A DNA stretch of 64,000 bases from Octopus sinensis (Eukaryota): the NCBI RefSeq assembly GCF_006345805.1, contig NC_043011.1, positions 24,378,464 to 24,442,463 on the forward strand, read 5' to 3'. The translations under genes and the position numbers were made by a program. Positions 4,730 through 58,530 of the stretch are shown one piece after another. The number at the start of each line of letters is the position of its first letter. Within the stretch, counting starts at the first letter, position 1. Below the pieces are notes generated by a model that was not told the origin of the DNA, did not search any database, and saw only the letters and a list, made by a program, of their open reading frames with translations.

Positions 4730-4844
4730 AACAATAATAGTTAAATATATAAGCAAACAGAGTCAAACAATATTTATCAAAATATATAAATAAGATAATG
4801 ATTTTTCTCATAGAAGAAACTCCATTAATTAATCTAGTTTTTTT

Positions 4845-5547
4845 GGCTGTCTCCATACATATACTTGGCTGGTGGTTGGAAATAAGGGAAAAGAATGACT
4901 CGTCTGAGAAAATAACATTCTTTCACTGCTCTACGGACCAACTCTGTAGGTTTTTTACTCCACTCTAAATGCTTTGCAATGTTTGTTTTTGAAAGTAGTG
5001 GTTTTCTGATTGTAGCTCTCCCGTGAAATCCAGCTTTGTGCAGCTCCTGGCAAACAGTTTTTGTAGAAACTGGGTTCTTGAGGTGGTCATTAAGCTCTGC
5101 AGTAATTTTGGGAGCTGTATTTTTGTGATCCTTTTTAACAATTCGCATAAGAGTCCGATGGTACCTATCTGAAAGTTTTGGTTTTCTTCTGGAGTTTTGT
5201 TTCAACAAGGAGGTTTTTCCTTCTTTCTTAAAGGCTGTCATTACTTTCAAGACAATACTTCTTCATACGCCAAACATTTCGGCTGTTTTCGTTATGCTAG
5301 CACCTGTCATATGAGCACCAATAATATGACCTCTTTGAAAGTCTGATAGATCTGTCATTTTAATGAATTTTAATTACCTTTTTCTAATAATATCTGAAAA
5401 CAAACAGCAATTTTAGCAAAACATATTAAGCAACACTAATAATAAATAAAAAAACATTAAAATAAACAAGCTTCTGATGGTTTTATAGATATTTCAAAAT
5501 TATGATGCTGTGATGCTAGGTGTTTCCATTACTTTGTTCAACCCCTG
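4845..5547 (-). mobile_element. Tc1-family DNA transposon, 5' half (truncated transposase)
   Basis: TIR CAGGGGTTGAACAAAGTAATGGAAACACC next to TA (5548-5549). ORF 4834-5250 reads RKPKLSDR...TAPKITAELN...TVCQELHKAG...RKPLLSK (HTH region), with a frameshifted FPTTSQVYVWRQP at the start of the DDE domain. Confidence 0.9.
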
Positions 5548-5833: not shown

Positions 5834-6011
5834 GTCAATCTTCAGGTTAACAATAATAGTTAAATAAATAAGCAAACAGAGTCAAACAATATTTATCAAA
5901 ATATATAAAATAGATAATGATTTTTCTCATAGAAGAAACTCCATTAATTAATTTAGTTTTTTTGGCTGTCTCCATACATATACTTGGCTGGTGGTTGGAA
6001 ATAAGGGAAAA

Positions 6012-9000
6012 AGGAAAATTAAATTCCGCAAATATACCAACCAATTGCAAAAAAAACATGAGAGAAAAATTAAGGAGATTAGCGACTCGAATAAGATCTT
6101 CGTTAATTCTGACAAGACAAGGAACTTATATGCACTTGATAAGGACGTTTATAAACGCCTGATTTCGAATAGTGTCACGGACACATACAAAAAAGACAAC
6201 ACGAATATATACAAAGAGGTGAACTTAGAAGCAAGAGGAATAGCTAACGATCTTAAGATTAGCGATAGGATTGAATACCTTTCACCACGACCAGCTTTTA
6301 TACTCTGAAAGACCATAAAGCCAATTTTAGTAGAACCCCAAATGTAGATTGATAAATCCGGCTAAAACTGAGATAGGAATTATTAGCAAAAATATTTTGG
6401 ACCGTATTTTAGTTAAGTTAGATAGTGAAGTAGACTTGAGAATTTGGAAGAATAGTAAGTCAGTTATAGAGTGGTTTAAAGGTATTAGCTATAAGAATTA
6501 TTGTAGTTTCACACAATTCGACATTATTGACTTTTACCCGTCAATATCTAGGACGTTGCTCCTAAGGGCATTGGACTTTGCCAAGCAGTATGTCAACATC
6601 GATAGCTCGGAAATTGAAATTATTATGCATGCGAGGAAATCGCTTCTTTTTTCAAGGATTCCACCTGGATTAAGAAGACTGAGGATTCTCTTTTCGATGT
6701 ACCGATGGGGGCATACGACGGGGCTGAATTATGTATGCTCACAGGAGCCTTTATTCTCCATAATCTAAAAATAGAATTCCCATTTATAGATGCAGGTTAT
6801 ATGGGATGACGGCCTTATAGCCACGCATAATCTAAACGGCCATGAATCAGATAGACTTAGGAAGGACTTTATAGCTTTCTTTCAAAGGATGGGCTTAACG
6901 TTACGATAGATGCTAACCTGAATAGTGTAGATTTTTAGACGTAAATTTTAATGTAAGATCGGATAGATTTAAACCTTTCCGTAAGCCCAATGAAAAGCTA
7001 TCGTATATTAGCAAAGATTCGAACCATCCACCAGTTATCCTTAGGAACTTAGTCAGCAATGTAGGTAGAAGAATATCTTCAATTTCTTCGGACGAGGCAG
7101 CATTCCATAATGCTGCACCTTATTATGATAGCGCATTAAAGAATAGTGGATTCTCGGAGAAGATCCAGTTCAACCAGCTTAATGCTGATAATAATGCTGC
7201 ACGAAGAACTAGGACCAGGAAAGTTTTGTGGTTCAACCCGGCTTTCAATTTAGCCGTAAAGACTAATATAGGTAAGGAATTTTTGAGATTAGTCTCTAAG
7301 CATTTTAAGCAGGGTCATAAATTCTACAGAATATTTAATAGAAGAACCCTGAAGGTTAGCTATTCTTGTTGCAGAAATTTCGCCTCTTACATTAGCCAAC
7401 ATAATAGGAAGCTAATTGAGATTAGACATGGTGCCGAGCCCATTAAGAAATGTATTTCAAAAACGAAAGCTCCTGTCCGTTAGAAGGGAAATGTCTAGTG
7501 AAAGGAGTAGTTTATAGAGCCAAGGTGCAAGTGGAAGGCTCATCGGAATACAAGACATACACAGGGGCTTCAGAAAATTCATTTAAAACAAGATTTTATT
7601 CTCATAAAAATTCATTTAAATACCCAGAGAATAGGAAGAAAACCAGCCTAGCAAAATATGTCTCGGAACTAAAAGAAAAGGAAGCCCCACCTTTCAACGT
7701 GACATGGAGCATTCTGGACAGGGCGGCACCATACAGGCATGGAGCTTACAAAAATAATTTCAAGTGCAGACTTTGTCTATTAGAAAAAATGTACATCTTA
7801 TTCAAAGACAATAATTCTTTGAATCAAAGAAGTGAGTTAATGAACTTATGTAGGCACGCGGCTAAATTTAAAATATCGAATATAAATATACCATATGGAT
7901 AGAGTATATATTTTGTATTTTTTTATTTTTGATTTTGATTTTGACTCTTGAGCGCTACGATGGATTTTGATTTTGATTCTGCTTGTGTTTCCAAGCTATG
8001 CGGATCTTAATCCGTATAGCAAAGTCTTATGTTTCTACATATATATTAGGAAAAACCTACAAACTTTGTTTTCATGTTATTGTATTGCATAGGATTACCT
8101 TGATATCTATATTACCTTGATTATTTATAAATGACCCAAAATAGGATGTTATATTTTATTTTGTCTTTCGTATATATTTTTATTAATGCACCCATTTTTA
8201 AAAGCAATGTTTTTAAAAAAAGCAATGTTGTCAAAATTAGAATGTTTATATAAGTATGTGTATAGCAAAGCATATATTTGTAAGCATGCGTATCTGTGTA
8301 TGTGTAAGTGAAAGTATGTTTGTGCTTAAGCACACATATACACGACGGTATGTATATGTATCATCATTCAAACTTGTGTATGTATACTGGTCTCTATAGA
8401 TGCCAATAGCACAGTTACACTGCTTGTATACATAATTTTTTTTCTTATTTCTTTTTTTTCCCCACCCCTCCTTCGTTCCTTTTTCTCTCTCTCCCTTTCT
8501 TTCGTTCCCCCTCCTTGCCCAGTATATGAGAATTGCTACATAGATGAAATTTAGCTTGCGTGCGAGACGGTTTGCGTGAATATATGTACACATGCTTTTA
8601 TGTGTATATTTAAATTTATATTCATACGTCTGTATATGTATGTATGGCGTTTACGCGCATCCTTTTGTGTATGTTGATATATATATGTAGATTTTAATAT
8701 AAATATGTATTGCAGTATTTATAACAGGTTTAATTTCTATGCATTATTTGCACTGTCTTCATTAACGTCAATAGGTTTTTTCCTCGGATTTTATAATTTT
8801 ATAAGTTTTTTTATATATATACATATATTTTTGACCTTTTTGTTTATCGCTCGAAGATTGACCGTTTTTTCTAAAGGGCCAATCAAACAAGTCCATTTCT
8901 TTTTAAAGGTGTAGCGTTTGTAGAGTATAGATTGAATTGATATATCAGTTCCATTCTAGCAAAACTGTCTGATGAACGGCAACGAGAAACTCAGAGTACA

Positions 9001-12995: not shown

Positions 12996-13400
12996 TACTC
13001 TTTTACTCTTTTACCTGTTTCAGTCACGTGACTGTGGCCATGCTGGAGCACCGCCTTTTAGTCGAGCAAATCGACCCCAGGACTTATTCTTTGTAAGCCT
13101 AGTACTTATTCTATCGGTCTCTTTTGCCAAACCGCTAAGTTATGGGGACGTAAACACACCAGCATCAGTTGTGAAGCGATGTTGGGGGAATAAACACAGA
13201 CACAAACATATACACACACATACATATATATATTTACATACATACAATGGGCTTCTTTCAGTTTCCGTCTACCAAATCCACTCACAAGGCTTTGGTTGGC
13301 CCGAGGCTATAGTAGAAGACACTTGCCCAAGGTGCCATGTAGTGGGACTGAACCCGGAACCATGTGGTTCGTAAGCAAGCTACTTACCACACAGCCACTC
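12996..13400 (-). mobile_element. Full-length major tRNA/CORE SINE
   Basis: Head GAGTGGCTGTGTGGTAAGTAGCTTGCTTACGAACCACATGGTTCCGGGTTCAGTCCC through tail GAAACAGGTAAAAGAGTAAAAGAGTA. Confidence 0.9.
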
Positions 13401-20956: not shown

Positions 20957-21347
20957 TCTTTTATTCTTTTATTTGTTTCAATCATTTGACTGTGGCCAAG
21001 CTGGAGCACTGCCTTTAGTCGAGCAAATTGACCCCAGGACTTATTCTTTGTAAGCCTTGTACTTATTCTATTGGTCTCTCTTGCTGAACCGCTAAGTGAT
21101 GGGGACGTAAACACACCAGCATCAGTTGTCAAGCGATGTTGGGGGTACAAACAGACACACAAACATATACATACACATATATATATATGATGGGCTTTCA
21201 GTTTCCGTCTACCAAATCCACTCACAAAGCTTTGGTCGATCTGAGGCAATAGTAGAAGACACTTGCTCAAGGTGCCACGCAGTGGGACTGAACCCGGAAC
21301 CATGTGGTTGGTAAGCAAGCTACTTACCACACAGCCATTCCTGCGCC
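20957..21347 (-). mobile_element. Major SINE nested in an older opposite-strand SINE (about 20637-21425)
   Basis: Full head-to-tail copy; the host SINE resumes after 21347 (AAACCC...CCAGCATGGCTGCAGTC...AAACAAGTAAAA). Confidence 0.85.
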
Positions 21348-21817
21348 TGTTTAACTAAACCCTTCTAAGCAGAGCCCCAGCATGGCTGCAGTCCGATGAC
21401 TAAAACAAGTAAAATATATAAGATAAAAGAGTCTTCAACACACTGAAATTCTGAAGCAGTGTTTTTGAAAGGGGGCTGTGTGCATATCACTTGGGTGGGA
21501 GTATGGCACTATTTTGGTGGGTTGTGTGTTACTTCAGAATAGGGTGTAAGTAAACAAGTGAATTAAACTTGCAATTAAATTTTGAATATTGATATAAATA
21601 TTGAATATTGATTTGCCTGTTGATGATAAAGGCACACATTATTTTGGAAAATTGGAAATTTGGCATGGCATAAAAAAAAAGAAAAAAAGAGAAACTCTTC
21701 CCAAAATAATAATCTCACATACACTTTCATTGAAATGCAACTCTATTGGAACAATAACATGAGGACCATGCTCCCTCCTCAACATGAACAACCACACACA
21801 AGCAGTCTAATATAGTC

Positions 21818-27002: not shown

Positions 27003-27214
27003 ATGGGGTGCTGAAAAGTTCCTTGTTTTAAGAGTATTGTGAAAGGCCTTGTTGGAGGACCAACTTTCCAAGTTCTTTTACAGGGCTTAGAAAAGCTGAA
27101 AGACCACTGCAATAAGTGTGTGAATCTAAGAGAGGAATATGTTGGGTAAAATCATAATTAACTGACCCTCTTGCATTTTCTTTTGCTCAAAAGAACTTTT
27201 GAGCATCCCCTTGT
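27003..27214 (+). mobile_element. Mariner-derived MITE
   Basis: TIRs GGGGTGCTGAAAAGTTCC / GAACTTTTGAGCATCCCCTTGTA; an opposite-orientation copy lies at about 54330-54540. Confidence 0.7.
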
Positions 27215-27221
27215 ATATATG

Positions 27222-27543
27222 TTCTCTTGTGGAAGTGCCATCCAACCAAAATGCAAATATATGGGAAACTACCACCTGTGTCATCTCTTGTGAAAGGTAG
27301 GAGGGTCCAGTTTGCTGGACATTGTTGTAGAGCTGAAAAAGAAGTAATTTCTACTCTTCTCCTCTGGAAGCCATCTACTCGCAATACCAGAGGGCGCACA
27401 CTCTCCTACCCTGATGTAATCTCCAGGGATATAGGCATCCAGCAACAGGACCTCCGTAATGCCATGATGGACCGTGAAGTCTGGCGTAGCATGGTAAATT
27501 CCATTGTCTCGACCACGGTCGAACAATGATGATGATGATGATG
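27222..27543 (+). mobile_element. RTE-clade LINE 3' end with (GAT)n tail
   Basis: ORF 27227-27529 ...GRRVQFAGHCCRAEKEVISTLLLWKP...DREVWRSMV..., followed by (GAT)n. Confidence 0.85.
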
Positions 27544-27700: not shown

Positions 27701-28590
27701 TCTGATAGCCCATAACCAACGACTACATATGTGTGTGTGTATTTGTGTTTGTTCTACTAACACTTGGTAAACAATGTTGGTTTGCTTATATCCCATTAAC
27801 TTAGCGGTTTGCCAAAATATCAAGAGAATAAGTACCAGACCATACTTAAAACTGAATGCTGGGGTCAATTTGATCAGCTAAATCTTCCAAGACAATGCCC
27901 CAGCATAGCCACTGCACAATAATCGAAACAGTTAAAAGATAAAAGATTCCTGATAAATGCAGCAAAATGGTGATTGATCCAATAGAAATGGTCGCTTGTG
28001 ACCAGCAGTACTATTGATGCACTATAAAATTTAATGCACTATAAAAAATTTTTTTAAATTAATAAAATAATATTGAAAAAATCAGCTAATTGCTATTACA
28101 AAAACAGAATTGAGATGATAAGGGGAAACTTTATGCAGCTGCTCAACCAGTTAAAATGGCTGCCAAATTACTTCCAGCCATACTCTGTCGTCTTAAAAAA
28201 AGTAGCAACTCCATTTGATAATTTCTTCCAAAATATCTTTTAAGTGGCACAGTTGCCAGCACTAGGATTGTGTGTGTTCATAGACATGCTCAATCAGTGT
28301 TGACCTGGCATTAAATAACAATAACAACAACAACAACAGCAAAATAGAGTATTAATTTTGAAGTTCACATAATTGTGAAACATCTATCTTTTATCTTTTG
28401 TCTGTTCCATGTTTCAGTCATTAGACTGTGGCCATGCTGGGGCACCACTGTGAAGAAAGTTTTGTTGAATGAATCAACCACAGTACTTTTTTTTTTTAAA
28501 GACTGATACTTATTTTATCAGTTGCTTTTGCTGAACTGCTAGATTACAGGAATGTAAACACAACACCACCAATTGTCAAGCAGTGATTGG

Positions 28591-28800
28591 GCCATCCAAG
28601 AATTTGGACCCGGAGATCTCCTTTTCCAGTGACTTAGAGGGCCACCTCCCGGTGGTGTTGGGCGTCAACGAAGAGCCCTCGACTACAACAAGACGACCAA
28701 AGTTTTTTTTTTCTTTTCCAAGGTCTGAGGTCTCCTGACCCTAAGCCCTAGACCATTACCTAATCACCCTTACCCGTCTTGTTGCTTAACAACAACAACA
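28591..28800 (+). mobile_element. ~210-bp non-tRNA short retroposon with (AAC)n tail, copy 1
   Basis: TSD AGCAGTGATTGGG at 28579-28591 and 28800-28812; second copy inverted at 31305-31510. Confidence 0.85.
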
Positions 28801-29389
28801 GCAGTGATTGGGGACATCCTCAAACACGAATACATGCATGTACACACGCATGCACAGACATATATTTATACGATGGGCTTCTTTCAGTTTTCATTTAACA
28901 TATCCACTCACAAGACTTTGGTCGACCTGAAGCTATAGTTGAACCATGTGGTTGGGAAGCTTCGTACCACACAGCCACACCTGTGCCTGTAAAGATAAAA
29001 CCCAATAATCCTGAAAATGTCCAAAGCTGTCTTTTGCAAAATGGATCTCTATTGGTTTTATACAATGAGTATTCTAGTCGTTTGATCAACTAAACTACCT
29101 ACCAAGTACTCCTCAGATGCCTATGATCTATAAACAGAGACAGCTTGTTATAATATGTAACAAAGCTGGATCTTTTGAATTACAATTATATTCCTTCTGA
29201 CAGCCTACGAAAGCGTCTGGCTAACCAGTTTTACTCTTTAAGCTTGGAGCAGCCTGAGGCTATAGTAAAAAGACACTTGCCCAAGATACCACACAAGGTC
29301 TCATGATTGATTGTAAAACAAGTTTCTTAATCACCCAGCCATGTCTTAATTAATGACTTGTCAGAAGAAATGATAATATTAAATATTGA

Positions 29390-30989: not shown

Positions 30990-31860
30990 TAGTTGAAAGT
31001 ATAGCAACGACTGTGAGGTGAGAATAACTAAAGGTGATGATGATGATGGTGGTGGTAATAGTGGTGGTGGTGGCACTTGATTTAATAGCATGGTCATAAT
31101 GGTAGTGATGATGGTGGTGGTGGTGGTGGCAATGTTGATAGCGGAACTGGTCATTGTTGTAGCACTAATGATGTTGTTGGTGGTAGTGGTGTTGATCATG
31201 ATGGTGGTGTTGGTAGCAGTGGTAGTGTTGGTAACAGTGTTGGTGTTGGTAGTGGAGGTGTTGTTGGTTGTGGTGTTGTTGTTGTTGGTGGTAGTGGTAT
31301 GTTGTTGTTGTTGTTAAGCAACAAGACAGATAAGGGTGATTAGGTGATGGTCTAGGGCTTAGGGGCGGGAGACCCCAGACCTTGGAAAAAAACAAAAACT
31401 TTGGTCGTCTTGTTGTAGTCAAGGGCTCTTTGTTGATGCCCAACACCACTGGGAGGTGGCCCTCGAAGTCGCTGGAAATGGAGATCTCAAGGTCCAAATT
31501 CTTGAACAGCGTAGTGGTATGTTGGTGGTGGTGGTGGTGATGTCAGTAGTAGTAGCAGTAATGTATGATGTTGTTGTTGTTGTTGTTGGTTGTGGTGGTG
31601 ATAGTGGTGATTGTAGTTGCAGTGGTGTTGGTTGTTGTAGTGTTGATTGCAGTGGTGTGGAAGGTATGATGGCTGCAGTGGTGATAGTGATGGTAGTAGT
31701 GGTTGTGTAGTTGGTGGTGATGGTGGTGGACAGTAGTGGTTGTGGTGGTTTTAGTGGTTATGGTGGTGGTTGTTGTGATGCTGGTTGTTATGGTGATTGA
31801 AGTTGTAGTGGGAGTTGTGGTGAAAGTAGTTATGATGGTAGCGGTGGTGGTGGTGGTGCC
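30990..31860. repeat. Degenerate trinucleotide low-complexity tract (GGT/GTA/GTT/GAT)
   Basis: Directly visible; generates poly-Val/poly-Thr pseudo-ORFs. Confidence 0.9.
31305..31510 (-). mobile_element. ~210-bp non-tRNA short retroposon with (AAC)n tail, copy 2
   Basis: TSD GTAGTGGTATGTTG at 31291-31304 and 31511-31524; colinear with 28591-28800. Confidence 0.85.
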
Positions 31861-36258: not shown

Positions 36259-36603
36259 ATCATCATCATCATCATTGTTCGACCATGGTCGAGACAATGG
36301 AATTTACTATGCTACGCCAGACTTCACGGTCCATCATAGCATTACGGAGGTCCTGTTGCTGGATGCCTGTATCCCTGGAGATTACATCAGGGTAGGAGAG
36401 TGTGCGCCCTCTGGTATTGTGAGTAGATGTCTTCCAGAGGAGAAGAGTAGAAATTGCCTCGTTTTCAGCTCTACAACAATGTCCAGCAAACTGGACTCTC
36501 CTACCTTTCACAAGAGATAACATAGGTGGTAGTTTCCCATATATTTGCATTTTGGTTGGATGACGCTTCCATGAGAGATTTTGAGCTCTCATAAGGAGGC
36601 AAG
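36259..36603 (-). mobile_element. RTE-clade LINE 3' end with (GAT)n tail (same family as 27222)
   Basis: LLMRAQNLSWKRHPTKMQIYGKLPP...GRRVQFAGHC...DREVWRSIV. Confidence 0.85.
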
Positions 36604-38639
36604 AGAAAGAATATAGTGGTGCTTGTGTTCCAAAGGTATGAATAACTCTGTTAATAAAAATACATTGATTCCTCGCGCAGCTTGTACATGGTGATGTGTG
36701 GAAGATAAACATAAAAAAATATTTCTAGTGGCAACTCTTTCCTCTCTGGCTATCTCAAAAGAAATTCCTTATTTATAGCCATCTGTTGGCTCAAAACAGA
36801 CCACACATTTGCTGGTCTGACAAGCGATATCGTTGAATGACTTAGAACATCCAATCAGCACAGCCTAGTATGGTCATGTGACCACTTGTAGAAAACAAGC
36901 AAAATACTCCAATTGGCAGCTAAGTTTAGACAGCCAAATAATAATCATAGCATTCGCTACACCTTCATATAACACAGAAGAATCAAATAATCTTCACCTC
37001 TACAGTCATCAACCACAGAGCATCAAGTAGTGCATACAAGAAATGGTACATGACAAACATCTCACAAACATTGACACATAATGAGTTAGAAGGTACTATG
37101 CACCCCAGAGGGATCATCAACAACTTTGGCAGTCTCTTGCACTCTCATACAAACAGAATGGTTTGAGACTTTCTCTTGCCACAGAGTATGTTTTATTTTG
37201 TATGAGACACCAGAGGGCACAGCTTTTGAGGGTACATCTCCTTCTTATATCTTAAGATAACCTTGCGATATAAGGGGGAGCGTGCAACTCCTCCTTATAA
37301 TTGAAGACAACCACGCAAGGCTATCTTAAATGGTGGATCAAACAGTCTGAGTTTCTTTCTTTTTTTTCTTCTTTTGTGGTATTCATCATATCAGTGACAA
37401 TGAAGTATCACTACAGCCCCAGTAAATATATGGACATTAGCAGCCACTTCTCTGTGCACCAACATGTGATCACATCCTTTGTTGAAGTGCTGTGTAATCA
37501 AATATTTGAATACTTTCTTGATTACAAATCAGTGAATACCTCTTATAACCACATGCAGTGAACCTTTGTGGACAATGAAAGATCTCCATTTCTGGAGCTT
37601 CAAGTATATGGAAGAAGTAGAATAAGCAGGAACAGTTTTGATCCTCTTGGATAATAATAAAAACAATAGGATCAAGAGTACAAAAGGCCGAAATAGGGTT
37701 CTTCCGAATAGGCTTTGGAGATGCATTACGCTATTGTGTGCATAGCCTGGACGTCAGATAGGTGTTTCAGGTAGAGCCTCTTCTTCTATGAATTGGGAGA
37801 TCACAGCTCCTATCCTATAGAAATGTGGTGAGAATGTCTCAGAAAAGAATCAATGGACAGGTTTTACAGGCAAAAACAACAAACAGGTAACCCAGGGGCA
37901 GACCATGAGCAAGGTGTTTGGATAGTATCCATGTGCTCAGTTGATCTCGTTTGGATTTCCAACAGGTTCAATTGGAGACAGTTGCTTCTGAAGGGACCAG
38001 ATAGAAGACGGCTTGAGTACGTTCAAATGACTAGCCTTCGGCACCATAATACTGTTAGACTTTCAAGGCCGGAGAAAGTTAAAAATGTCAGCTCATTCTC
38101 ATTAATCTGTAAGTGCTGAGAGAAGAAAACAAAAGACTCTAAATATAAATTTTAAAGTACTGATTTTTCTGAGACAAAAAATTCTTCAATGCTGTGCCCC
38201 AGCATGGCCGCATTCCAATGACTGAATTTTAGAAAATAAAAAAAATCCCCGAAGAAGCTGTTATTTCTAGCATGTGGAGAGACCTAGGCTTAACTTCATA
38301 CGTTGGTTGAATATTATTAAAAAAAATTCTGGCGTCGATACGTTCGACTAAAAATTCTTCAAGGTGGAGCCCCAGCATGGCCACAGTCTAATGACTGAAA
38401 CAAGTAAAAGGGGAAAACAAAAACAAAATAAACGAAAAATATAACTGTTGATAGATAGGCACGTATGCACACACACACGCACGCACGCACAAATGTGTAT
38501 ACACACACAAACACATTAATGTAAATGCATACATTACATATGTAAATATTTGTTTGTGTACGTATGTGTGCTATCGTGTGAGTGCGCGTGTAGCGTCTAT
38601 GTGTGAAATTCATTTAAGAGATTTCTATGTTTCTTCATA

Positions 38640-39687: not shown

Positions 39688-39744
39688 CTTTGAGTTCTTA
39701 AATACTCTCTGAAACATGCTGGTTGGTACCATAACATAGTTACA

Positions 39745-40540
39745 AGGTGTCCGGTATTGTTCCTCCAAACGTATGAACTTTTAGCCAGGCAATTTCAGGA
39801 CAGGAAACCTGGAGGTTCCGACCAGCAAAAATTCCTGGCCTGGCAATGTTACCGAGGAGCCGTTCGGGATAAGCTCGCACGACACGGTCGAACTACCACT
39901 GCCGACTGTCCAAGATGCGGGCGGGATAGGGAAACCGTCCTGCACGCTATTGTTCAGTGTCCGGGAGTGTCTGAAGTGTGGGCTTATGCAGAACATCTGC
40001 TGTCAGGTTCGGGAAGAGTACAGCTGTCGTCTGAGTCAATCGTAAAAATTGACCCGCCGGATTTCCTCACGAAAGAAGGTAAGCAATGTTTTCTCGCAGT
40101 AGTAGCAATAGCGAAAGAGGTGGTATGGAAGGAAGTCGCGAATGAAAGGTTTGGCGACAGGCAACCTCATCTCCGGTCTCGGGTTGGTGAGATTTTTTAT
40201 CTTCCACCTTAAAAGGAAGGTGAGGCTGGAGAGAAGATGCCTGTCAAAGAAAATGTTCAAAGAAAGATCGTTGCATGTTGCGAGGGTGTTGGGAATGAAA
40301 GATTCGTCGTGAACATGTCATAAGTCTGAATACAAAAGTTTCAGTAGGAGAATGGGGCTCGTGGGGTCGGAGCGTAAGCCATCTCTGCTTCATCTCATGT
40401 TTGTATTACGTCCTTGTATCTCATTCGATTTCATTATATTTTGTAAAATTTTAAAAGTCATATAATCATTGTGCGTCTGACCCCAATCAGGCTGTATTGT
40501 CCCCCTCTATGTTTGGGCCCTTGTGGCTAATAAAAAAATT
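39745..40540 (+). mobile_element. L1/Tx1-clade LINE 3' fragment (zf-RVT region + 3' UTR)
   Basis: KFLAWQCYRGAVRDKL...CPRCGRDRETVLHAIVQCP...WAY (CCHC zinc knuckle of L1/Tx1 ORF2); ends CTAATAAAAAAA. Confidence 0.85.
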
Positions 40541-42513: not shown

Positions 42514-42865
42514 GTTGGTACTCTTGAGTTTGAAGTGCAATGCTAGTCGTCAACCATTTTGAATTTCATTCAAATTCAAAATGGCTGACAACTAGCATTG
42601 CACTTTATACTCAAGAGTACCAATGTATTTGAATCAAACAGGTTTGATTAATACATACATACATACATACATACATACATACATACATGCATGCATGCAT
42701 GCATGCATGCATGCATGCATGCATGCATATATATATATATATATATAATATTATTAGAGACAAAACCACTATTTTGCAAAACAAACAAGGAAAGACTTAA
42801 TCAATACATAAAATTTTAATAAAAAGTCAAAAAAACCGCCACTACAATTGTTTCTTGTCCTGATT

Positions 42866-43139
42866 GCCGAACCGCTAAGTGACGGGGACGTAAACACACC
42901 AGCATCGGTTGTCAAGCAATGCTAGGGGGACAAACACAGACACACAAACAAACACATACATATATACATATATACGACAGGCTTCTTTCAGTTTCCGTCT
43001 ACCAAATCCACTCACAAGGCATTGGTCGGCCCGGGGCTATAGCAGAAGACACTTGCCCAAGATGCCATGCAGTAGGACTGAACCCGGAACCATGTGGTTG
43101 GTTGGTTAGCAAGCTACTTACCACACAGCCACTCCTGCG

Positions 43140-43142
<3 letters not shown>
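42866..43142 (-). mobile_element. Major tRNA/CORE SINE (tail-truncated)
   Basis: Near-consensus head and body, as in 57826-58245. Confidence 0.85.
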
Positions 43143-43187
<45 letters not shown>

Positions 43188-44682: not shown

Positions 44683-45939
44683 GATCAGATCATTAAAAAT
44701 GAAATGTCTGATTTTCTTATGCACCAAATTTGACAGTCATTAACTCTAATGTTTTATCCTGACAATTCTTTGTTTTATGATATTGAGGAGTCACATCTCA
44801 TCACTTTCCGAAATGCAATCCATGGTGTCTTATTATATTGTGAGTTTTCTCTTGTAAATCAATTTTTGTGAACCCATGGATAGATAAAAAAATTTCTGTT
44901 GCTTATGAATATGAGTTCTGTTGGGGAACCAATGCGTCCCAGACAGCTCGAAACATCAATGAAGTATTTGGTGAAGATGTGGCAAATGAGCGCACTGTAA
45001 GTTAATGGTTTGAGAAGTTCCAGTCTGCTGACCTTACTCTTGAAAATCAGCCCCATGGTAGACCTGATACCAAGGCAGATAATGAGCTGGAAACTGTAGT
45101 GGAAGTGGATACATCTCAAACTATATGTGAGTTAGTGGCAAGGTTTGATGTTTGATGTTTCGATTGCAACTATATTGGACCATCGGTAAGGTATAGAAGT
45201 TGGCCAAGTGACTACCACATGAACTGAACAAGCATCAAATATGACATGTCATCTTGAAACTTGCTGTTCTTTGCTGTCACCATATAAAAACGAACTATTT
45301 TTGCATCATATTGTTACATGTGATGAAAAATGGATTCTTTTCAACAATATCAAGTATTCTGCACGATAGGGACAAAGTGCCAAAGCACAATCCAAAAGAG
45401 AATATTCACTAAAAAAAGCTAAAGGTGTCTGTTTGGTGGTCTAGCACTGGTGTCATCTACTACAGCTTCATGAGACCTGGTAAGTCAATTACAACACACG
45501 TACACATCAATCAATTGGATGAAATGACGAGTGAACTTGCAATTAAACTACAGGATTGGTCAACAGAGACAGTTCAATTCTCTTGCAAGACAATGCTCAA
45601 CCACATGTTTTGCAAAAAACACTACCCAAGTTACAGGAAATGAATTTAGAAGTACTCTGTCATCCACCACATTCACCAGACCTTGCACCAACTGACTGTC
45701 ACATTTTCTAGACATTAGACAACATTTTTCAAGGAAAAACACTTAAAATATGAAGAAGCTGCAAAAACAGCCTTTCATGATTTCATCACCTCTTGCTCTC
45801 CGGCATAAGTAAGCTACCGATAAAATGTCAAAATTGTGTTGAATATTTAGGTGCATACTTTGATTAACTGCATTGCTTTTTGTTGAGATAAAGTAAAATA
45901 AACTTTCAGTTCAAAATTGAACATCTCATTCTTAATGAA

Positions 45940-48431: not shown

Positions 48432-50059
48432 TATATTAAGTCATTAAGAAGTAAAAACAAGTAAAAGAATTACCCATGACTAGAAATTGTTTGACAATAT
48501 TAATTATCATTTGAGACAGTAGTTAGATGCAGACAAATCTCCAGAAACTATTGCAAACATTTTCTAGCATAACTACTGAATCCCATAAATGTTTGTAGTG
48601 ACTATATAGTATAAGCAAAATTTTTATTTTCCAACAAGCAGGATCAATGACTGCAAACTCATAATGTCAGAAATTAGCCATATGTGTGAAAAACTGAAAT
48701 CACAAAAACACCCAAGACCAGTTAATTAACTGACTTGGACAAATTCCGTTGCATGACAACACTTGATCACACAATTCTAAATCATTCTTCTCAAATTAAC
48801 AGAGCTAGGATATGAAATTTTGTTGCACCCAACATACTCTCTAGACATCTCCACTAGACATTTCATTCTTTCAGACACTTGCAGCCGTTTATATGTAATA
48901 AAAGATTTACATATCTAAAAGCTGTAGCGGAAGCTTTCAAGTAGTTCTACTTTTTTCTTAGTCACAAAAGACAGAGGTTTTTTAAGTAAAATAGGAATAT
49001 CTAATTTAACGTCACATTAACAAAAGACAATTGAACATAATGGACCATAGTTTGATTAAATAAATTTGCATAATCTCGTTTATAGTGTGTTCACTTTTAA
49101 TTTAAAAAACACTTCATGTTGTTTTTTTAATCTATATATATATATGTATGTATGTATGTATGTGTATGTATATATATATGTATATATATGTATATATATA
49201 TAATGGATAAAACCCTTTCATTTGCCATATATATATATTATATGTATGTATGTGGACACAGGTGCAACTGTGTGGTTAAGAAGCTTTTTTCCTAACCATG
49301 GTCTTAGGTTCAGTCCTACTGTGTGACACTTTTAACATGTGTTTCTACTGTAGCCCTGAGCTGACCAAAGCTTTGTGAGTGGATTTGGTAGATGAAACTT
49401 GGAAGAAGCCCATTTTATTATGTGTGTATGTGTGCATGAGAGTGTTCATGTATGCCATTGTTTTGGCATTATGTAATGGTCGTAAATGAGTACCACTGCC
49501 TTAGAAGCGTTCTTGTTTGTTTCCAGTTTTCCACAAAGACATGTCTGGCCAAGTGGTGATGGTTGGCAACAGGAAGGGCATCTGGCTGAAGGAAAAAAAT
49601 TTGCCGCAACAAAATCCATCTGGCCCCAAGGCATGGAAAAGTGGACATTAAATGATGGTGATGATGATGATGATGATATTTAACAAAAATTAGTTAATAG
49701 AAATAACTCAGGGTGGCCACTTGTTAGGTCTCTCATGAATGCTATGGTAACATTGAATCCAGTATAACTTGTTGCATGGTTGAGTTGTCAGTCATAATTA
49801 AACTGGTACCTCCACTAAGCTTGCCTAATGACGAGGGTAGCTAGAAACCCAGCAGGACTAAAAAAACTGAACTTAGTGTTGGTTCAATGATTATCTGGCT
49901 AGAGCACAGGCTCTTAGAAATTCTATGTTGGTTTCTGGTGTGCTAGCAGACTACTGGGAGTGAGGCACCCCATCAGCTTTTATGAAAGCTTGTCTCTAGG
50001 AGAAGATAATTCCAATATAAAACTGGATATGCAGGATGTTGTGATGAGAGTTATGACAC

Positions 50060-50760
50060 CCCCTTCTGAGTTATTTACTCAATATGGTATTCCAGGCATG
50101 TTAGTTTCAGATAATGGAACACAATTCACAGGATATGAATTAAGAAATTTCTGCAAAATGTCATAAATGCCATAAAGCATATCTTTACTCTGCCCTACCA
50201 CCCAAGGTCAAATGGGCAGGCAGAAAGATTTGTTGCTATGTTCAAAAGAGCTCTAAGAGAAGCTAGGAATGAACTAGATAATGACAAGGCACTAACGAAA
50301 TTTTTGAGAGTATATAGAATAACTCCAAATCCAAATACTAATTCAGGAAAGTCACCAGCAGAGTTAATGTTCACATGTAAAATAAAATCAATCTTCGGTA
50401 AACTATTTCCAGGAAAAAATACATATAAAAGAAAGACAAAAAATACTTTTGAAGGAAATACAAGAAATATTACAAAACATTTCAAAGTAGGAGATTAAGT
50501 TCATTTCAAAAATTACAAAAATGATAAAGAAGATTGAGAGGATGGCTGTGTAATAAAAAGATTAGGTAACATGATTTATTTAATTAAAGGAGAATGTTCA
50601 GAACATGAGAAACACCTTAACCAGTTAAAGATGAGATATACAGAAGAATGAAGCGTAATACCAATGGAAGTTTTCTATGATATGTTTGAAGTGCCAGTAC
50701 TGAGAGATATTGAACCCCATAGAACTAGCTTCAGAAAAAGAAAACAGACTGACTATCTGG
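50060..50760 (+). mobile_element. Gypsy-type LTR retrotransposon integrase remnant
   Basis: YGIPGMLVSDNGTQF, PYHPRSNGQAERFV..FKRAL, YRITPNPNT..GKSPAELMF. Confidence 0.9.
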
Positions 50761-56330: not shown

Positions 56331-57177
56331 AAGCCATCAAATCTACACATACTGCATACATATGCTGACTTCAAATACGGCACACATACACACAAACTTG
56401 CACTAATACCTTAATGTTGTTTAAAATTCCTCTGAAGGAGCCCTGGATCAAGGTTAGAAGCCAGTTCTCTCTCCATTGGCAAGAAACCCAGAAATAAAAT
56501 TAAATAATAACATACATGCAAATATGCATACGTACACATGTAGCTTAGTGGTTAGGGTATTCAGTTCACAATTGTAAGATTGTGAGTTCAATTTCCAGCC
56601 ACATGTTGTATCCTTAAGCAAGACACTCTATTTCATAGTGTTCCAGTCCATTCAGCTGGTAAAAATCACTAGTTCCTGTATTTCAAAGGGCCAGCCTTGT
56701 CACACCCTGAGTCATGTTGAATCTCCTTGTCAACTGTGCTCAGAGTATGCATATCTGTGGAGTGCTCAGTCACTTGCATGTTAATTTCACGTGCAGCCTG
56801 TTCCATAGATTGGATCCACTGGAACACTCAGTCATAACTGACAGAGTGCTAGTGCACACATATACACATACATACACACACACACACACACACATATGAC
56901 TACATACTTATATAAATACTTTTATATATAAATGCATAGATTCATACATACATACATACATATATATATATTTAAGTAGGTGAATGAATTATCCTAGTAT
57001 GGATAATTCGGTTAACCGATACCCGGGTAGCAAATTCACGTCAGAAAACACGGTTGAAGCTACATGCCAAGGGCAGAAATCCCGTGTTCTCGTGTGGAAA
57101 TTTGTGCGTTTTTTTTTAACTATAAGTAAATGAAGAATGGAGTTGAACGACGATTTTAACAAAATTCCTTTACTCTC

Positions 57178-57499: not shown

Positions 57500-57825
57500 C
57501 GTCATAGCAAAATACAATTTGCAATGCAAAATTGCAAAGCATCCATGCCAGTGCTGCATTAACACGACCCATACCAGTGCTTCATAAAAGCAGCCGTGAC
57601 GGCGGCATGTAAAAAGCACCCAGCATGCAGTTAAGTGGTTGGCATTAGGAAGGGCATCCAGCCATAGAAACCATGCCACAACAATTAGAGTGTTGACAAC
57701 TCCCTGCTAGCCAGGTCCATGTCAAACCATCCAACCCTTGCCAGCATGGGAAGTGGATGTTAAACAATGATGATGATGATGTGTGTGTGTATATGATGAT
57801 GATGTATATGTAAAATATATATATA

Positions 57826-58245
57826 TACTCTTTACTCTTTTACTTGTTTCAGTCAGTTGACTGCAGCCATGCTGGAGCACCGCCTTTAGTCGAGCAACTC
57901 GACCCCGGGACTTATTCTTTGTAAGCCCAGTACTTATTCTATCGGTCTCTTTTGCTGAACCGCTAGGTGACGGGGACATAAACACACCAGCATCGGTTGT
58001 CAAGCAATGCTAGGGGGACAAACACAGACACACAAACATACACGCACACACACACATATATATATATATATATACATATATACGACGGGCTTCTTTCAGT
58101 TTCCGTCTACCAAATCCACTCACAAGGCTTTGGTCGGCCCGAGGCTATAGTAGAAGACACTTGCCCAAGGTGCCACGCAGTGGGACTGAACCCAGAACCA
58201 TGTGGTTGGTAAGCAAGCTACTTACCACACAGCCACTCCTGCGCC
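57826..58245 (-). mobile_element. Full-length young major tRNA/CORE SINE
   Basis: Complete head (GGCGCAGGAGTGGCTGTGTGGTAAG...GGGTTCAGTCCC) to (AAAGAGT)n tail; CpGs intact. Confidence 0.92.
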
Positions 58246-58530
58246 TATATACATATATATATGTATATATATACATATATACATATACACATACAAAACG
58301 GAAAGTTTTGTATGTGGAACAGTCATTTTAACAAGTTGTTTTTATTTATTTATCCCCCAATGAGATATATCTGCACCACCAGATGCTCCTGAACCAGTTG
58401 TTGAGTGTCCCACCCAAGGGGAATTGATGCTAGATGTGTTGAAATAATTGTCATGATTAGTAATAAATTCTCGTATATTCCATCTTCTGTCTTTCATTTG
58501 TTATATATGGATATATGTACACTATATCTA

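What the first reader, a model, noticed from the sequence alone, without database searches (positions are those of the whole stretch)
28579..28812. Short retroposon with no Pol III head, a fixed 5' end and an HDV-like ribozyme fold (SIDE-like)
Seen: two copies (28591-28800 plus, 31305-31510 minus), each with its own 13-14-bp TSD and (AAC)n tail. Both start at the same position: GCCATCCAAG and GCTGTTCAAG, each a CpG-decay product of GCCGTCCAAG. There are no A/B boxes, and an internal T-run would stop Pol III. By-eye HDV-like parse in copy 1: P2 GAGGGCC(28637)/GAGCCCTC (one bulge), P3 ACC/GGT, L3 TCCCGGT, P1' GTTGGGC, then GT, almost no P4, J4/2 CGAA (28669). A 3' stem-loop GGTCTGAGG...CCCTAGACC precedes the tail. 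Established: HDV-like ribozymes process the 5' ends of R2 and RTE elements, and SIDEs keep only ribozyme plus 3' end. Inference: a ribozyme-headed SINE class. Caveat: the best P1 partner (GTCCAA) starts 3 nt inside the 5' end and gives only 6 bp.
Basis: partly seen in the sequence, partly recalled or inferred. Interest (0 to 1): 0.8.

Follow-up and report, generated by a model that had tools for sequence, protein, structure and literature searches.

The report
Short octopus retroposon, ribozyme head unproven
Two copies of a roughly 200-base mobile element that was copied into an octopus genome by a LINE's enzymes are really there and lack the usual Pol III head, but the proposed self-cleaving (HDV-like) RNA at its front is only a loose fit and could not be confirmed.

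Summary
Two copies (28591-28799 plus, 31301-31510 minus) are about 91% identical. They start at the same base, end in (AAC)4-5, and each has its own target-site duplication. Four uninterrupted paralogues of the older repeat that copy 1 landed in act as empty sites. The host is Octopus (O. sinensis or a close relative). There is no tRNA, 5S or 7SL signal and no usable A/B boxes, and a T10/T5 run lies mid-element, so Pol III is unlikely.

The HDV-like ribozyme is not established. No Rfam ribozyme model matches either copy, even at E<=10. The published Lupták HDV-like descriptor is not matched; the best parse needs 3 errors, in L3 and in J4/2. About 2% of shuffles do as well. The best P1 begins at nt 3-4, not nt 1. 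Both P1 strands also sit in competing local hairpins. Two copies give no covariation power. No further copies and no partner LINE could be retrieved; the RTE copies in the window end differently.

Best reading: an unclassified, LINE-dependent, non-Pol III short retroposon. The ribozyme head remains a roughly 15% possibility. Ribozyme-headed non-autonomous elements are already known (R2 SIDEs, NARTc/SIDER).

The parts
28591..28799 (+). Copy 1 of the short retroposon (209 nt including the tail)
   Evidence: Boundaries are fixed by the target-site duplication and by the empty-site alignment.
28579..28591 (.). Copy 1, 5' target-site duplication AGCAGTGATTGGG. The last G (28591) can instead be read as nt 1 of the element.
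   Evidence: The same 13-mer is at 28800-28812. Paralogues carry it once.
28800..28812 (.). Copy 1, 3' target-site duplication AGCAGTGATTGGG
28591..28702 (+). Head module (nt 1-112) of unknown origin. It has no Pol III boxes, and its open frame has no homologue.
   Evidence: The nested fold is not unusual (z = -0.3).
28593..28599 (+). Candidate P1 5' strand (nt 3-9: CGTCCAA in the CpG-restored consensus, CATCCAA in this copy). It also forms a local hairpin with 28604-28609.
28635..28642 (+). Candidate P2 5' strand (nt 45-52: TCGAGGGC in the consensus, TAGAGGGC here)
28642..28655 (+). Inner hairpin CCACC-TCCC-GGTGG.
28658..28666 (+). Candidate P1 3' strand (nt 68-76, TTGGGCGTC)
28669..28672 (+).
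   Evidence: Compared with the published descriptor, it is 2 nt away from a perfect P2', or it abuts P2' if a 1-nt bulge is allowed.
28675..28682 (+). Candidate P2 3' strand (nt 85-92, GCCCTCGA)
28703..28717 (+). T-run T10CT4, which would act as a Pol III terminator and separates head from 3' module
28722..28754 (+). 3' stem-loop GGTCTGAGG...CCCTAGACC, a probable LINE recognition element
28788..28799 (+). (AAC)4 tail. It can pair with the TTGTTG just upstream of it.
31301..31510 (-). Copy 2 of the retroposon (210 nt including the (AAC)5 tail at 31301-31315)
31511..31520 (.). Copy 2, upstream target-site duplication ATACCACTAC (read on the minus strand; up to 14 nt with CAAC)
31291..31300 (.). 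Copy 2, downstream target-site duplication ATACCACTAC (read on the minus strand)
28400..29000 (+). Older copy of the abundant octopus composite SINE into which copy 1 inserted (insertion target, not part of the element)

Best explanation
This is a family of short (about 198 nt plus tail), non-coding, non-autonomous non-LTR retroposons in an Octopus genome. A LINE-encoded endonuclease and reverse transcriptase copy its RNA into new sites by target-primed reverse transcription.

Shown:
- Two independent insertions with 10-14-bp target-site duplications.
- An (AAC)n tail on each.
- An empty-site proof for one copy.

Inferred:
- The LINE enzyme recognises the 3' module: a 9-10-bp stem-loop about 35 nt upstream of the tail, plus a terminal TTGTTG/CAACAA hairpin and the (AAC)n tail. 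This is the way 'stringent' LINEs (RTE, CR1, L2 types) recognise their own 3' ends.
- The template RNA is not a Pol III transcript. There are no A/B boxes, and a T10/T5 run lies before the 3' module.
- The RNA is most likely made by Pol II. It could come from a promoter acting at the element's first bases or from a master locus. That would explain why both copies start at the same nucleotide.

A 5' self-cleaving HDV-like ribozyme is possible but is not supported by the sequence tests available here.
For: - Copies, duplications and tails.
- Empty-site alignment with four paralogues.
- The differences between copies are mostly CpG decay, as expected for neutral dead copies in a methylated genome.
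- No tRNA, 5S, 7SL or snRNA hit at E<=10 in either copy. ARAGORN is negative.
- A/B-box scan is negative. A genuine tRNA-headed SINE in the same window (56534-56607) is detected by Rfam and has clear boxes, so the method does see such heads.
- The 3' stem-loop is predicted in both copies, z = -1.9 and -3.6.
- The head's open frame has no homologue among 5.8 and 1.8 billion proteins.
- Host identity: an O. sinensis locus shares the window's repeats at 94-97%.
- O. vulgaris is reported to carry 893 recently active unclassified SINE families, together with active RTE, Dong-R4, CR1 and L1-Tx1 LINEs (PMC13282606).
Against: - Only two copies were available, so the 'fixed 5' end' is n = 2.
- No partner LINE with the same 3' module was found. 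The RTE fragments in the window end in ...STTVEQ* followed by (TGA)n and share nothing with the element.
- Pol II transcription is inferred by exclusion. No promoter was identified.
- The head does admit an HDV-like topology more often than chance would give (0.6-2.3% of shuffles), so 5' processing by a ribozyme cannot be excluded.
Confidence: 0.7

Rival explanations
1. The head (nt 1-92) folds into a minimal, P4-less HDV-like double pseudoknot. This ribozyme cuts the element's RNA out of read-through transcripts and so sets the uniform 5' end. The element would be an internally deleted derivative (SIDE) of a ribozyme-headed LINE.
For: - In the CpG-restored consensus, nt 3-9 (CGTCCAA) pair with nt 68-74 (TTGGGCG) for 7 bp. 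Extended from nt 1, the helix is 9 bp with one mismatch.
- This 3' strand lies inside an 8-bp hairpin (TCGAGGGC/GCCCTCGA), immediately after a small hairpin. That is the HDV-like pseudoknot order.
- A topology-only parse is found in 0.6-2.3% of 1000 shuffles.
- A parse within 3 errors of the published descriptor is found in 1.7-2.2% of shuffles.
- L3 (UCCCGGU) is one position off TYYHCG*Y; s4 = GU fits RN; a CGAA precedes P2'.
- Absence of P4 and a long J1/2 are tolerated in natural R2 ribozymes (PMC3774820).
- One pair changes on both sides between the copies (C3-G74 to U3-A74).
- HDV-like ribozymes are known at the 5' ends of R2, RTE and L1Tc-type LINEs and of their short derivatives (PMC3414825, PMC4035085).
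Against: - There is no exact match to the published descriptor. The 3 errors fall in L3 and J4/2 or in the spacing, where the family's few conserved nucleotides lie.
- There is no canonical 2-bp P1.1.
- The best P1 begins at nt 3-4, yet both copies keep the same 2-3 upstream bases (GCC/GCT). Cleavage at P1 would therefore not give the observed 5' end. A 9-bp P1 from nt 1 leaves no room for J1/4 and P4 and is longer than the 6-7 bp typical of the family.
- Both P1 strands are sequestered in the nested minimum-energy fold: GTCCAA-GAAT-TTGGAC at -6.9 kcal/mol against -6.4 to -6.6 for P1.
- No HDV, CPEB3 or drz model matches either copy at E<=10.
- The single double-sided change consists of two CpG decays in a copy that has lost 7 of its 11 CpGs. 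Two other helix positions are broken, and the shuffle control reaches the observed value in 229 of 500 trials.
- No parent LINE was found.
Confidence: 0.15
2. The two copies are ordinary 5'-truncated, dead-on-arrival 3' fragments of an unidentified LINE that happen to break at the same point, perhaps at a hot spot where reverse transcription stops.
For: - LINE insertions are commonly 5'-truncated.
- The 3' module with stem-loop and microsatellite tail looks LINE-like.
- Only two copies are known.
Against: - Both copies have an identical 5' end to the nucleotide, with unrelated flanks.
- The T-run splits the element into two modules, as in composite SINEs.
- The head's open frame has no LINE or any other homologue.
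- No longer copy is present in 84 kb of octopus DNA.
Confidence: 0.08
3. It is a degenerate Pol III SINE whose tRNA-like head has decayed beyond recognition. On this view the pairing of nt 1-9 with nt 68-76 and the 5-bp hairpin ending at nt 65 are relics of an acceptor stem and a T arm.
For: - The long-range pairing closes a 76-nt domain, which is tRNA size.
- A 5-bp hairpin ends at nt 65, just before the 3' strand, in the position a T arm would occupy (geometry read from the sequence).
- Most SINE heads are tRNA-derived (established knowledge).
Against: - There is no tRNA hit by Rfam at E<=10 or by ARAGORN, on either strand.
- No A box is present, and the best B-box match has 3 mismatches and is misplaced.
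- There is no D arm, and the would-be T loop is 4 nt with no TTCGA.
- A T10/T5 run would stop Pol III before the 3' module that retroposition needs.
Confidence: 0.05

Closest known systems
R2 SIDEs and R2/R1 hybrid SIDEs of Drosophila (Eickbush & Eickbush 2012, PMC3414825)
   Same: They are short non-autonomous non-LTR elements with no Pol III head and a defined 5' end. The 3' end is recognised by a LINE protein. The R1-type SIDEs have 14-bp target-site duplications.
   Different: SIDEs carry a demonstrated, active HDV-like ribozyme, and both of their ends match known parent LINEs. They also insert site-specifically in rDNA. Here the ribozyme is unproven, no parent is known, and insertion is dispersed.
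NARTc / RIME / SIDER elements of trypanosomatids with the Pr77 / L1TcRz head (PMC3383444, PMC3185411, PMC4035085)
   Same: They are dispersed, SINE-like, non-autonomous partners of a LINE. Their first roughly 77 nt set the RNA 5' end.
   Different: In those elements the head is both an internal Pol II promoter and a tested HDV-like ribozyme, and it is shared with L1Tc/ingi. Here no sequence similarity and no tested activity exist, and the phylum and tail type differ.
LINE-tail SINEs mobilised by stringent LINEs (RTE, CR1, L2 type; Ohshima & Okada 'common tail' model; Malik & Eickbush 1998 for RTE; from established knowledge and the reference lists seen)
   Same: The 3' module carries a stem-loop and a short tandem-repeat tail. 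They have target-site duplications and a two-module build.
   Different: Those SINEs normally have a tRNA or 5S Pol III head, and this one does not. The RTE copies in this window have a (TGA)n tail and a different 3' end.
Twister-headed Perere-3 (RTE clade) of Schistosoma, and hammerhead retrozymes (PMC8501958, PMC7229834)
   Same: They show that lophotrochozoan non-LTR elements can use a 5' self-cleaving RNA.
   Different: No twister or hammerhead core is present here. There is no GAAA anywhere in the element and no CUGANGA, and Rfam finds nothing.

Membership tests
LINE-mobilised non-autonomous retroposon (SINE in the broad sense) | Dispersed copies, each flanked by its own target-site duplication | tested here: met
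   A 13-nt and a 10-14-nt duplication around two copies in opposite orientation
LINE-mobilised non-autonomous retroposon (SINE in the broad sense) | An empty site lacks the element and carries the duplicated sequence once | tested here: met
   The joined flanks of copy 1 align colinearly with four paralogues of the host repeat. This could not be tested for copy 2, whose target is low-complexity sequence.
LINE-mobilised non-autonomous retroposon (SINE in the broad sense) | A 3' tail of A-rich or simple repeats, and no coding capacity | tested here: met
   (AAC)4 and (AAC)5 tails. The only open frame has no homologue.
LINE-mobilised non-autonomous retroposon (SINE in the broad sense) | The 3' end is shared with a partner LINE | tested here: inconclusive
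   No similar 3' end was found in the window, in L003 or in the RTE loci. No octopus-wide DNA search was possible.
Pol III SINE (tRNA, 5S or 7SL head) | Head homologous to a Pol III gene, with A and B boxes in register | tested here: not met
   Rfam at E<=10 and ARAGORN are negative. The box scan is negative.
Pol III SINE (tRNA, 5S or 7SL head) | No internal T4+ terminator before the 3' end | tested here: not met
   T10CT4 and T5GT7 at nt 113-127
HDV-like self-cleaving ribozyme | Nested double-pseudoknot order P1-P2-P3-L3-P3'-P1'-(P4)-J4/2-P2', with P1 of 6-7 bp, P2 of at least 5-6 bp and P3 of 3 bp | tested here: inconclusive
   The helices can be drawn in the CpG-restored consensus, and 0.6-2.3% of shuffles match this. 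Both P1 strands have equally stable local partners.
HDV-like self-cleaving ribozyme | Core motifs of the published descriptor: L3 = TYYHCG*Y directly between the P3 strands, P1' abutting P3', J1/4 = RN, at least 4 nt of P4 region, and J4/2 = CNRA* abutting P2' (RNArobo supplement, Figs S11-S12, PMC4870747) | tested here: not met
   There is no exact match. The best parse has 3 errors, a level reached by 1.7-2.2% of shuffles.
HDV-like self-cleaving ribozyme | P1.1: two pairs between L3 and the two bases that follow P1' | tested here: not met
   The bases after P1' are GT (6-bp P1), TC (7-bp P1) or AA (9-bp P1). None gives two canonical pairs with the CC of L3 (read from the sequence, index).
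HDV-like self-cleaving ribozyme | The cleavage site (5' of P1 nt 1) coincides with the 5' end of the retroposed copies | tested here: not met
   The best P1 starts at nt 3 or 4, and both copies keep GCC/GCT upstream of it. P1 reaches nt 1 only as a non-canonical 9-bp helix with a mismatch.
HDV-like self-cleaving ribozyme | Match to curated family models (HDV, CPEB3, drz-Agam and others) | tested here: not met
   No hit at E<=10 in either copy. These models cannot represent the pseudoknot, so this is weak evidence.
HDV-like self-cleaving ribozyme | Covariation that supports the helices | tested here: inconclusive
   With two sequences there is one double-sided change and two broken cells, and 229 of 500 shuffles do as well.
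HDV-like self-cleaving ribozyme | Self-cleavage that depends on the catalytic C | not testable with these tools
   This needs an in vitro transcription and cleavage assay.
SIDE (short internally deleted element) | Both the 5' and the 3' end are colinear with an autonomous parent LINE | tested here: inconclusive
   No parent was found. The window's RTE, and the RTE contigs L005/L006, share neither end. Other octopus LINE clades could not be searched.

The most novel reading that the evidence does not exclude
An octopus short retroposon family carries a minimal, P4-less HDV-like ribozyme as its only 'head'. It would be released from read-through Pol II transcripts by self-cleavage and mobilised by a LINE that is still unidentified. 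This would be the first ribozyme-headed SINE-like family in molluscs, and a non-site-specific, high-copy counterpart of the R2 SIDEs.
Probability: 0.15. Interest if true: 0.55.

Novelty: new member of a known kind. Interest (0 to 1): 0.3.

Why it matters
Octopus genomes are about 12% SINEs, most of them unclassified, and how headless SINE-like elements obtain a defined RNA 5' end is poorly understood. If the head were a working ribozyme, it would extend ribozyme-dependent retroposition from LINEs and a few rDNA or trypanosomatid parasites to a dispersed molluscan family. It would also add a very small natural HDV-like variant. As the evidence stands, the element is one more unclassified LINE-dependent retroposon. 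Its main value is as a cheap, well-defined candidate for a cleavage assay.

Tried and rejected
**More copies.**
- Exact-pattern scans of metagenome, prokaryote-genome and viral collections with three conserved 22-25-mers found nothing. The one exception was a chance hit in a C/A-rich contig, L004.
- A peptide search with the head's open frame found no candidate.
- A full HMMER search returned only a repetitive mycoplasma-like protein, which is spurious.
- Octopus DNA could be reached only through annotated proteins. One O. sinensis locus (L003, 20 kb) was obtained, and it holds no copy.
- Further cluster look-ups gave no more octopus proteins. A window ORF was not on record.
- Long ENA contigs (L001, L002) belong to another species.

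**Partner LINE.**
- The RTE family present in the window, in Tara Oceans contigs and in O. sinensis ends in ...STAVEQ* followed by (TGA)n. It shares neither end with the element and shows no Rfam ribozyme in its 5' region.

**Other ribozymes.**
- Twister was considered because Perere-3 (RTE clade) uses one. Superficial GC-rich word matches are in the wrong order.
- Hammerhead is excluded because the core motifs are missing.

**Other leads.**
- tRNA ancestry of the long-range pairing was considered and not supported.
- A literature search for the element's sequence words found nothing.
Full report
**What is there.** The window is AT-rich (about 35% G+C), repeat-dense animal DNA. An O. sinensis chromosome segment was fetched through an annotated RTE fragment (XP_029651369.1). 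It shares several of the window's repeat families at 94-97% identity, so the host is Octopus sinensis or a close relative.

At the stated coordinates there are two copies of one short element: 28591-28799 on the plus strand and 31301-31510 on the minus strand. They are 91% identical. They differ by 19 substitutions and a 2-nt indel in a T-run. Fourteen substitutions are transitions, and ten of those are in CpG context. This is the pattern expected for neutrally decaying copies in a methylated genome. No third copy, even a diverged one, is detectable in the window or in 20 kb of O. sinensis DNA.

**Insertion signatures.**
- Copy 1 is flanked by the perfect 13-mer AGCAGTGATTGGG (28579-28591 and 28800-28812).
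- Copy 2 is flanked by ATACCACTAC. This can be extended to 14 nt, depending on how the junction with the tail is read.
- The tails are (AAC)4 and (AAC)5.
- Copy 1 landed inside an older copy of the abundant octopus composite SINE. When its flanks are joined with one copy of the duplication, they align without interruption to four other copies of that SINE, three in the window and one in O. sinensis. These serve as empty sites and fix the boundaries.
- Both copies start with the same bases (GCCATCCAAG and GCTGTTCAAG), and their upstream flanks are unrelated.
- In copy 2 the first G is outside the duplication. In copy 1 it can be read as part of the duplication. An untemplated 5' G is therefore possible and is worth scoring on many copies.

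**Anatomy.**
- nt 1-112: a G+C-rich head.
- nt 113-127: a T-run (T10CT4 in copy 1, T5GT7 in copy 2).
- nt 128-197: a 3' module with a 9-10-bp stem-loop (GGTCTGGGG/CCCTAGACC), predicted in both copies with z = -1.9 and -3.6.
- A terminal hairpin in which TTGTTG pairs with the first tail repeats, followed by the (AAC)n tail.

This 3' arrangement is what LINEs that recognise their own 3' ends use (established knowledge). It is the inferred handle for mobilisation.

**Not a Pol III SINE.**
- Rfam finds no tRNA, 5S, 7SL or snRNA similarity in either copy, even at E<=10. ARAGORN finds nothing.
- The best B-box match has three mismatches and is misplaced. There is no A box in the first 30 nt.
- The T-run would end a Pol III transcript before the 3' module.
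- As a positive control, a classical tRNA-headed SINE at 56534-56607 in the same window is detected by Rfam and has clear A and B boxes.
- The head is open in one frame for about 37-55 codons. That peptide has no relative in two very large protein collections; the single hit is a repetitive mycoplasma-like surface protein.

**The ribozyme claim: what can be drawn.**
- nt 3-9 (CGTCCAA) pair with nt 68-74 (TTGGGCG) for 7 bp. From nt 1 the helix is 9 bp with one C-U mismatch.
- This 3' strand lies inside an 8-bp hairpin (TCGAGGGC/GCCCTCGA), just after a small CCACC-TCCC-GGTGG hairpin. That gives the HDV-like pseudoknot order.

**The ribozyme claim: how unusual is it.**
- A topology-only search (P1 of 7 bp near the 5' end, P3 of 3 bp, P2 of at least 6 bp) succeeds in 0.6-2.3% of 1000 dinucleotide shuffles of the head.
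- I then applied the descriptor that the Lupták group publishes for HDV-like ribozymes (RNArobo supplement, Figs S11-S12, PMC4870747). The head does not match it. The best parse needs three errors, two in L3 and one in J4/2.
- 1.7% of 600 shuffles, and 2.2% of 1000 shuffles when a P2 bulge is allowed, do as well.

**The ribozyme claim: further points against.**
- No two-pair P1.1 can be formed.
- The best P1 starts at nt 3-4, yet both copies retain the same upstream GCC/GCT. Cleavage at P1 would therefore not produce the observed end.
- The 9-bp alternative from nt 1 leaves no J1/4 or P4 and is longer than the 6-7 bp typical of the family (PMC3774820).
- In the nested minimum-energy fold both P1 strands are occupied by local hairpins that are at least as stable as P1: GTCCAA-GAAT-TTGGAC at -6.9 kcal/mol, against -6.4 to -6.6 for P1.
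- The head as a whole folds no better than its shuffles, z about -0.3.

**The ribozyme claim: points that do not count against it.** Natural R2 ribozymes can lack P4 and can have very long J1/2 (PMC3774820). Curated covariance models cannot represent the pseudoknot, so their silence is weak evidence.

**Covariation.** It cannot be judged. On the two-copy alignment, one pair changes on both sides (C3-G74 to U3-A74). Both changes are CpG decays, in a copy that has lost 7 of its 11 CpGs. Two other helix positions are broken, and the shuffle control is uninformative at 229 of 500.

**Other ribozymes.** Hammerhead and twister are excluded by missing core motifs and by Rfam.

**Partner LINE.**
- The window holds two 3' fragments of an RTE-clade LINE (27203-27543 plus, 36259-36724 minus).
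- Their ORF ends in ...STTVEQ and is followed directly by (TGA)n. The same holds for relatives in a Tara Oceans contig and in many other metagenome contigs.
- These share neither end with the element. Their 5' regions give no Rfam ribozyme hit.
- Other active octopus LINE clades (Dong-R4, CR1, L1-Tx1; PMC13282606) could not be searched, because no tool here scans octopus DNA.

'SIDE-like' therefore remains untested.

**Conclusion.** The element is a LINE-dependent, non-Pol III short retroposon of octopus with a uniform 5' end. I put about 0.7 on the reading that it is mobilised through its 3' module and that its RNA 5' end is set by transcription initiation or by an unidentified process. I put about 0.15 on a working HDV-like ribozyme, and small weights on a coincident LINE truncation or a decayed tRNA head.

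Even if the ribozyme were real, ribozyme-headed non-autonomous retroposons are an established kind: R2 SIDEs (PMC3414825), NARTc/SIDER (PMC4035085), and twister-headed Perere-3. The finding would be a new member in a new phylum, not a new class.

Noticed in passing
window 28400-29000; paralogues at 12996-13400, 20958-21348, 42864-43144, 57820-58248; L003:9168-9586: An abundant composite octopus SINE of about 400 bp, with an internal (CA)/(TA) microsatellite, recurs at least five times in the window. Copy 1 of the studied element is nested inside one of these copies.
   Followed up: partly
window 56534-56850 (+): A classical tRNA-headed SINE: Rfam tRNA at 29.7 bits, just above threshold, with A box TAGCTTAGTGG and B box GAGTTCAATTTCC. 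ARAGORN does not call it. It is a useful contrast to the headless element.
   Followed up: partly
window 27203-27543 (+) and 36259-36724 (-); L003:12177-12515; L005: These are 3' fragments of an RTE-clade LINE whose ORF stop is followed directly by (TGA)n. An O. sinensis protein annotated as 'craniofacial development protein 2-like' falls in the same 90%-identity cluster as this RTE. Near-full-length relatives occur in Tara Oceans and other marine metagenome contigs.
   Followed up: yes
window 5950-7900 (+): A run of frameshifted ORFs with reverse-transcriptase-like motifs, followed by a 150-aa ORF that looks like a GIY-YIG endonuclease (GVVYRAKV...YTGAS...RFYSHK). This suggests a Penelope-like element. 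There is no Pfam hit and no hammerhead by Rfam.
   Followed up: partly
window 39694-40540 (+): The 3' end of an L1-like LINE: a zf-RVT domain (E = 3e-7), about 300 nt of 3' UTR, then AATAAA and a short A-run.
   Followed up: partly
window 4834-5250 (-), 45413-45640 (+), 49918-50495 (+): Fragments of DNA transposons and of an LTR element: a Tc3-type HTH transposase domain, a mariner DDE fragment, and integrase core fragments.
   Followed up: partly
window 31040-31860: An 800-bp low-complexity block rich in GGT/GTT repeats on the plus strand (GC skew +0.36). Copy 2 inserted into it in the orientation where the target reads ACC/AAC, like the element's own tail. An (AAC)8 microsatellite also lies 250 bp upstream of copy 1. 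This may hint at tail-target microhomology in priming.
   Followed up: no
window 28591 and 31510: The first G of the element lies outside the target-site duplication in copy 2 and is ambiguous in copy 1. It could be an untemplated (cap-derived) G, which would argue for a capped transcript and against a ribozyme-cut one.
   Followed up: no
L004 (JGI metagenome contig Ga0307489_10031198) 2660-2681: This is a chance 22-nt exact match to the element's 3' module, inside a C/A-rich low-complexity region. It is unrelated to the element.
   Followed up: yes
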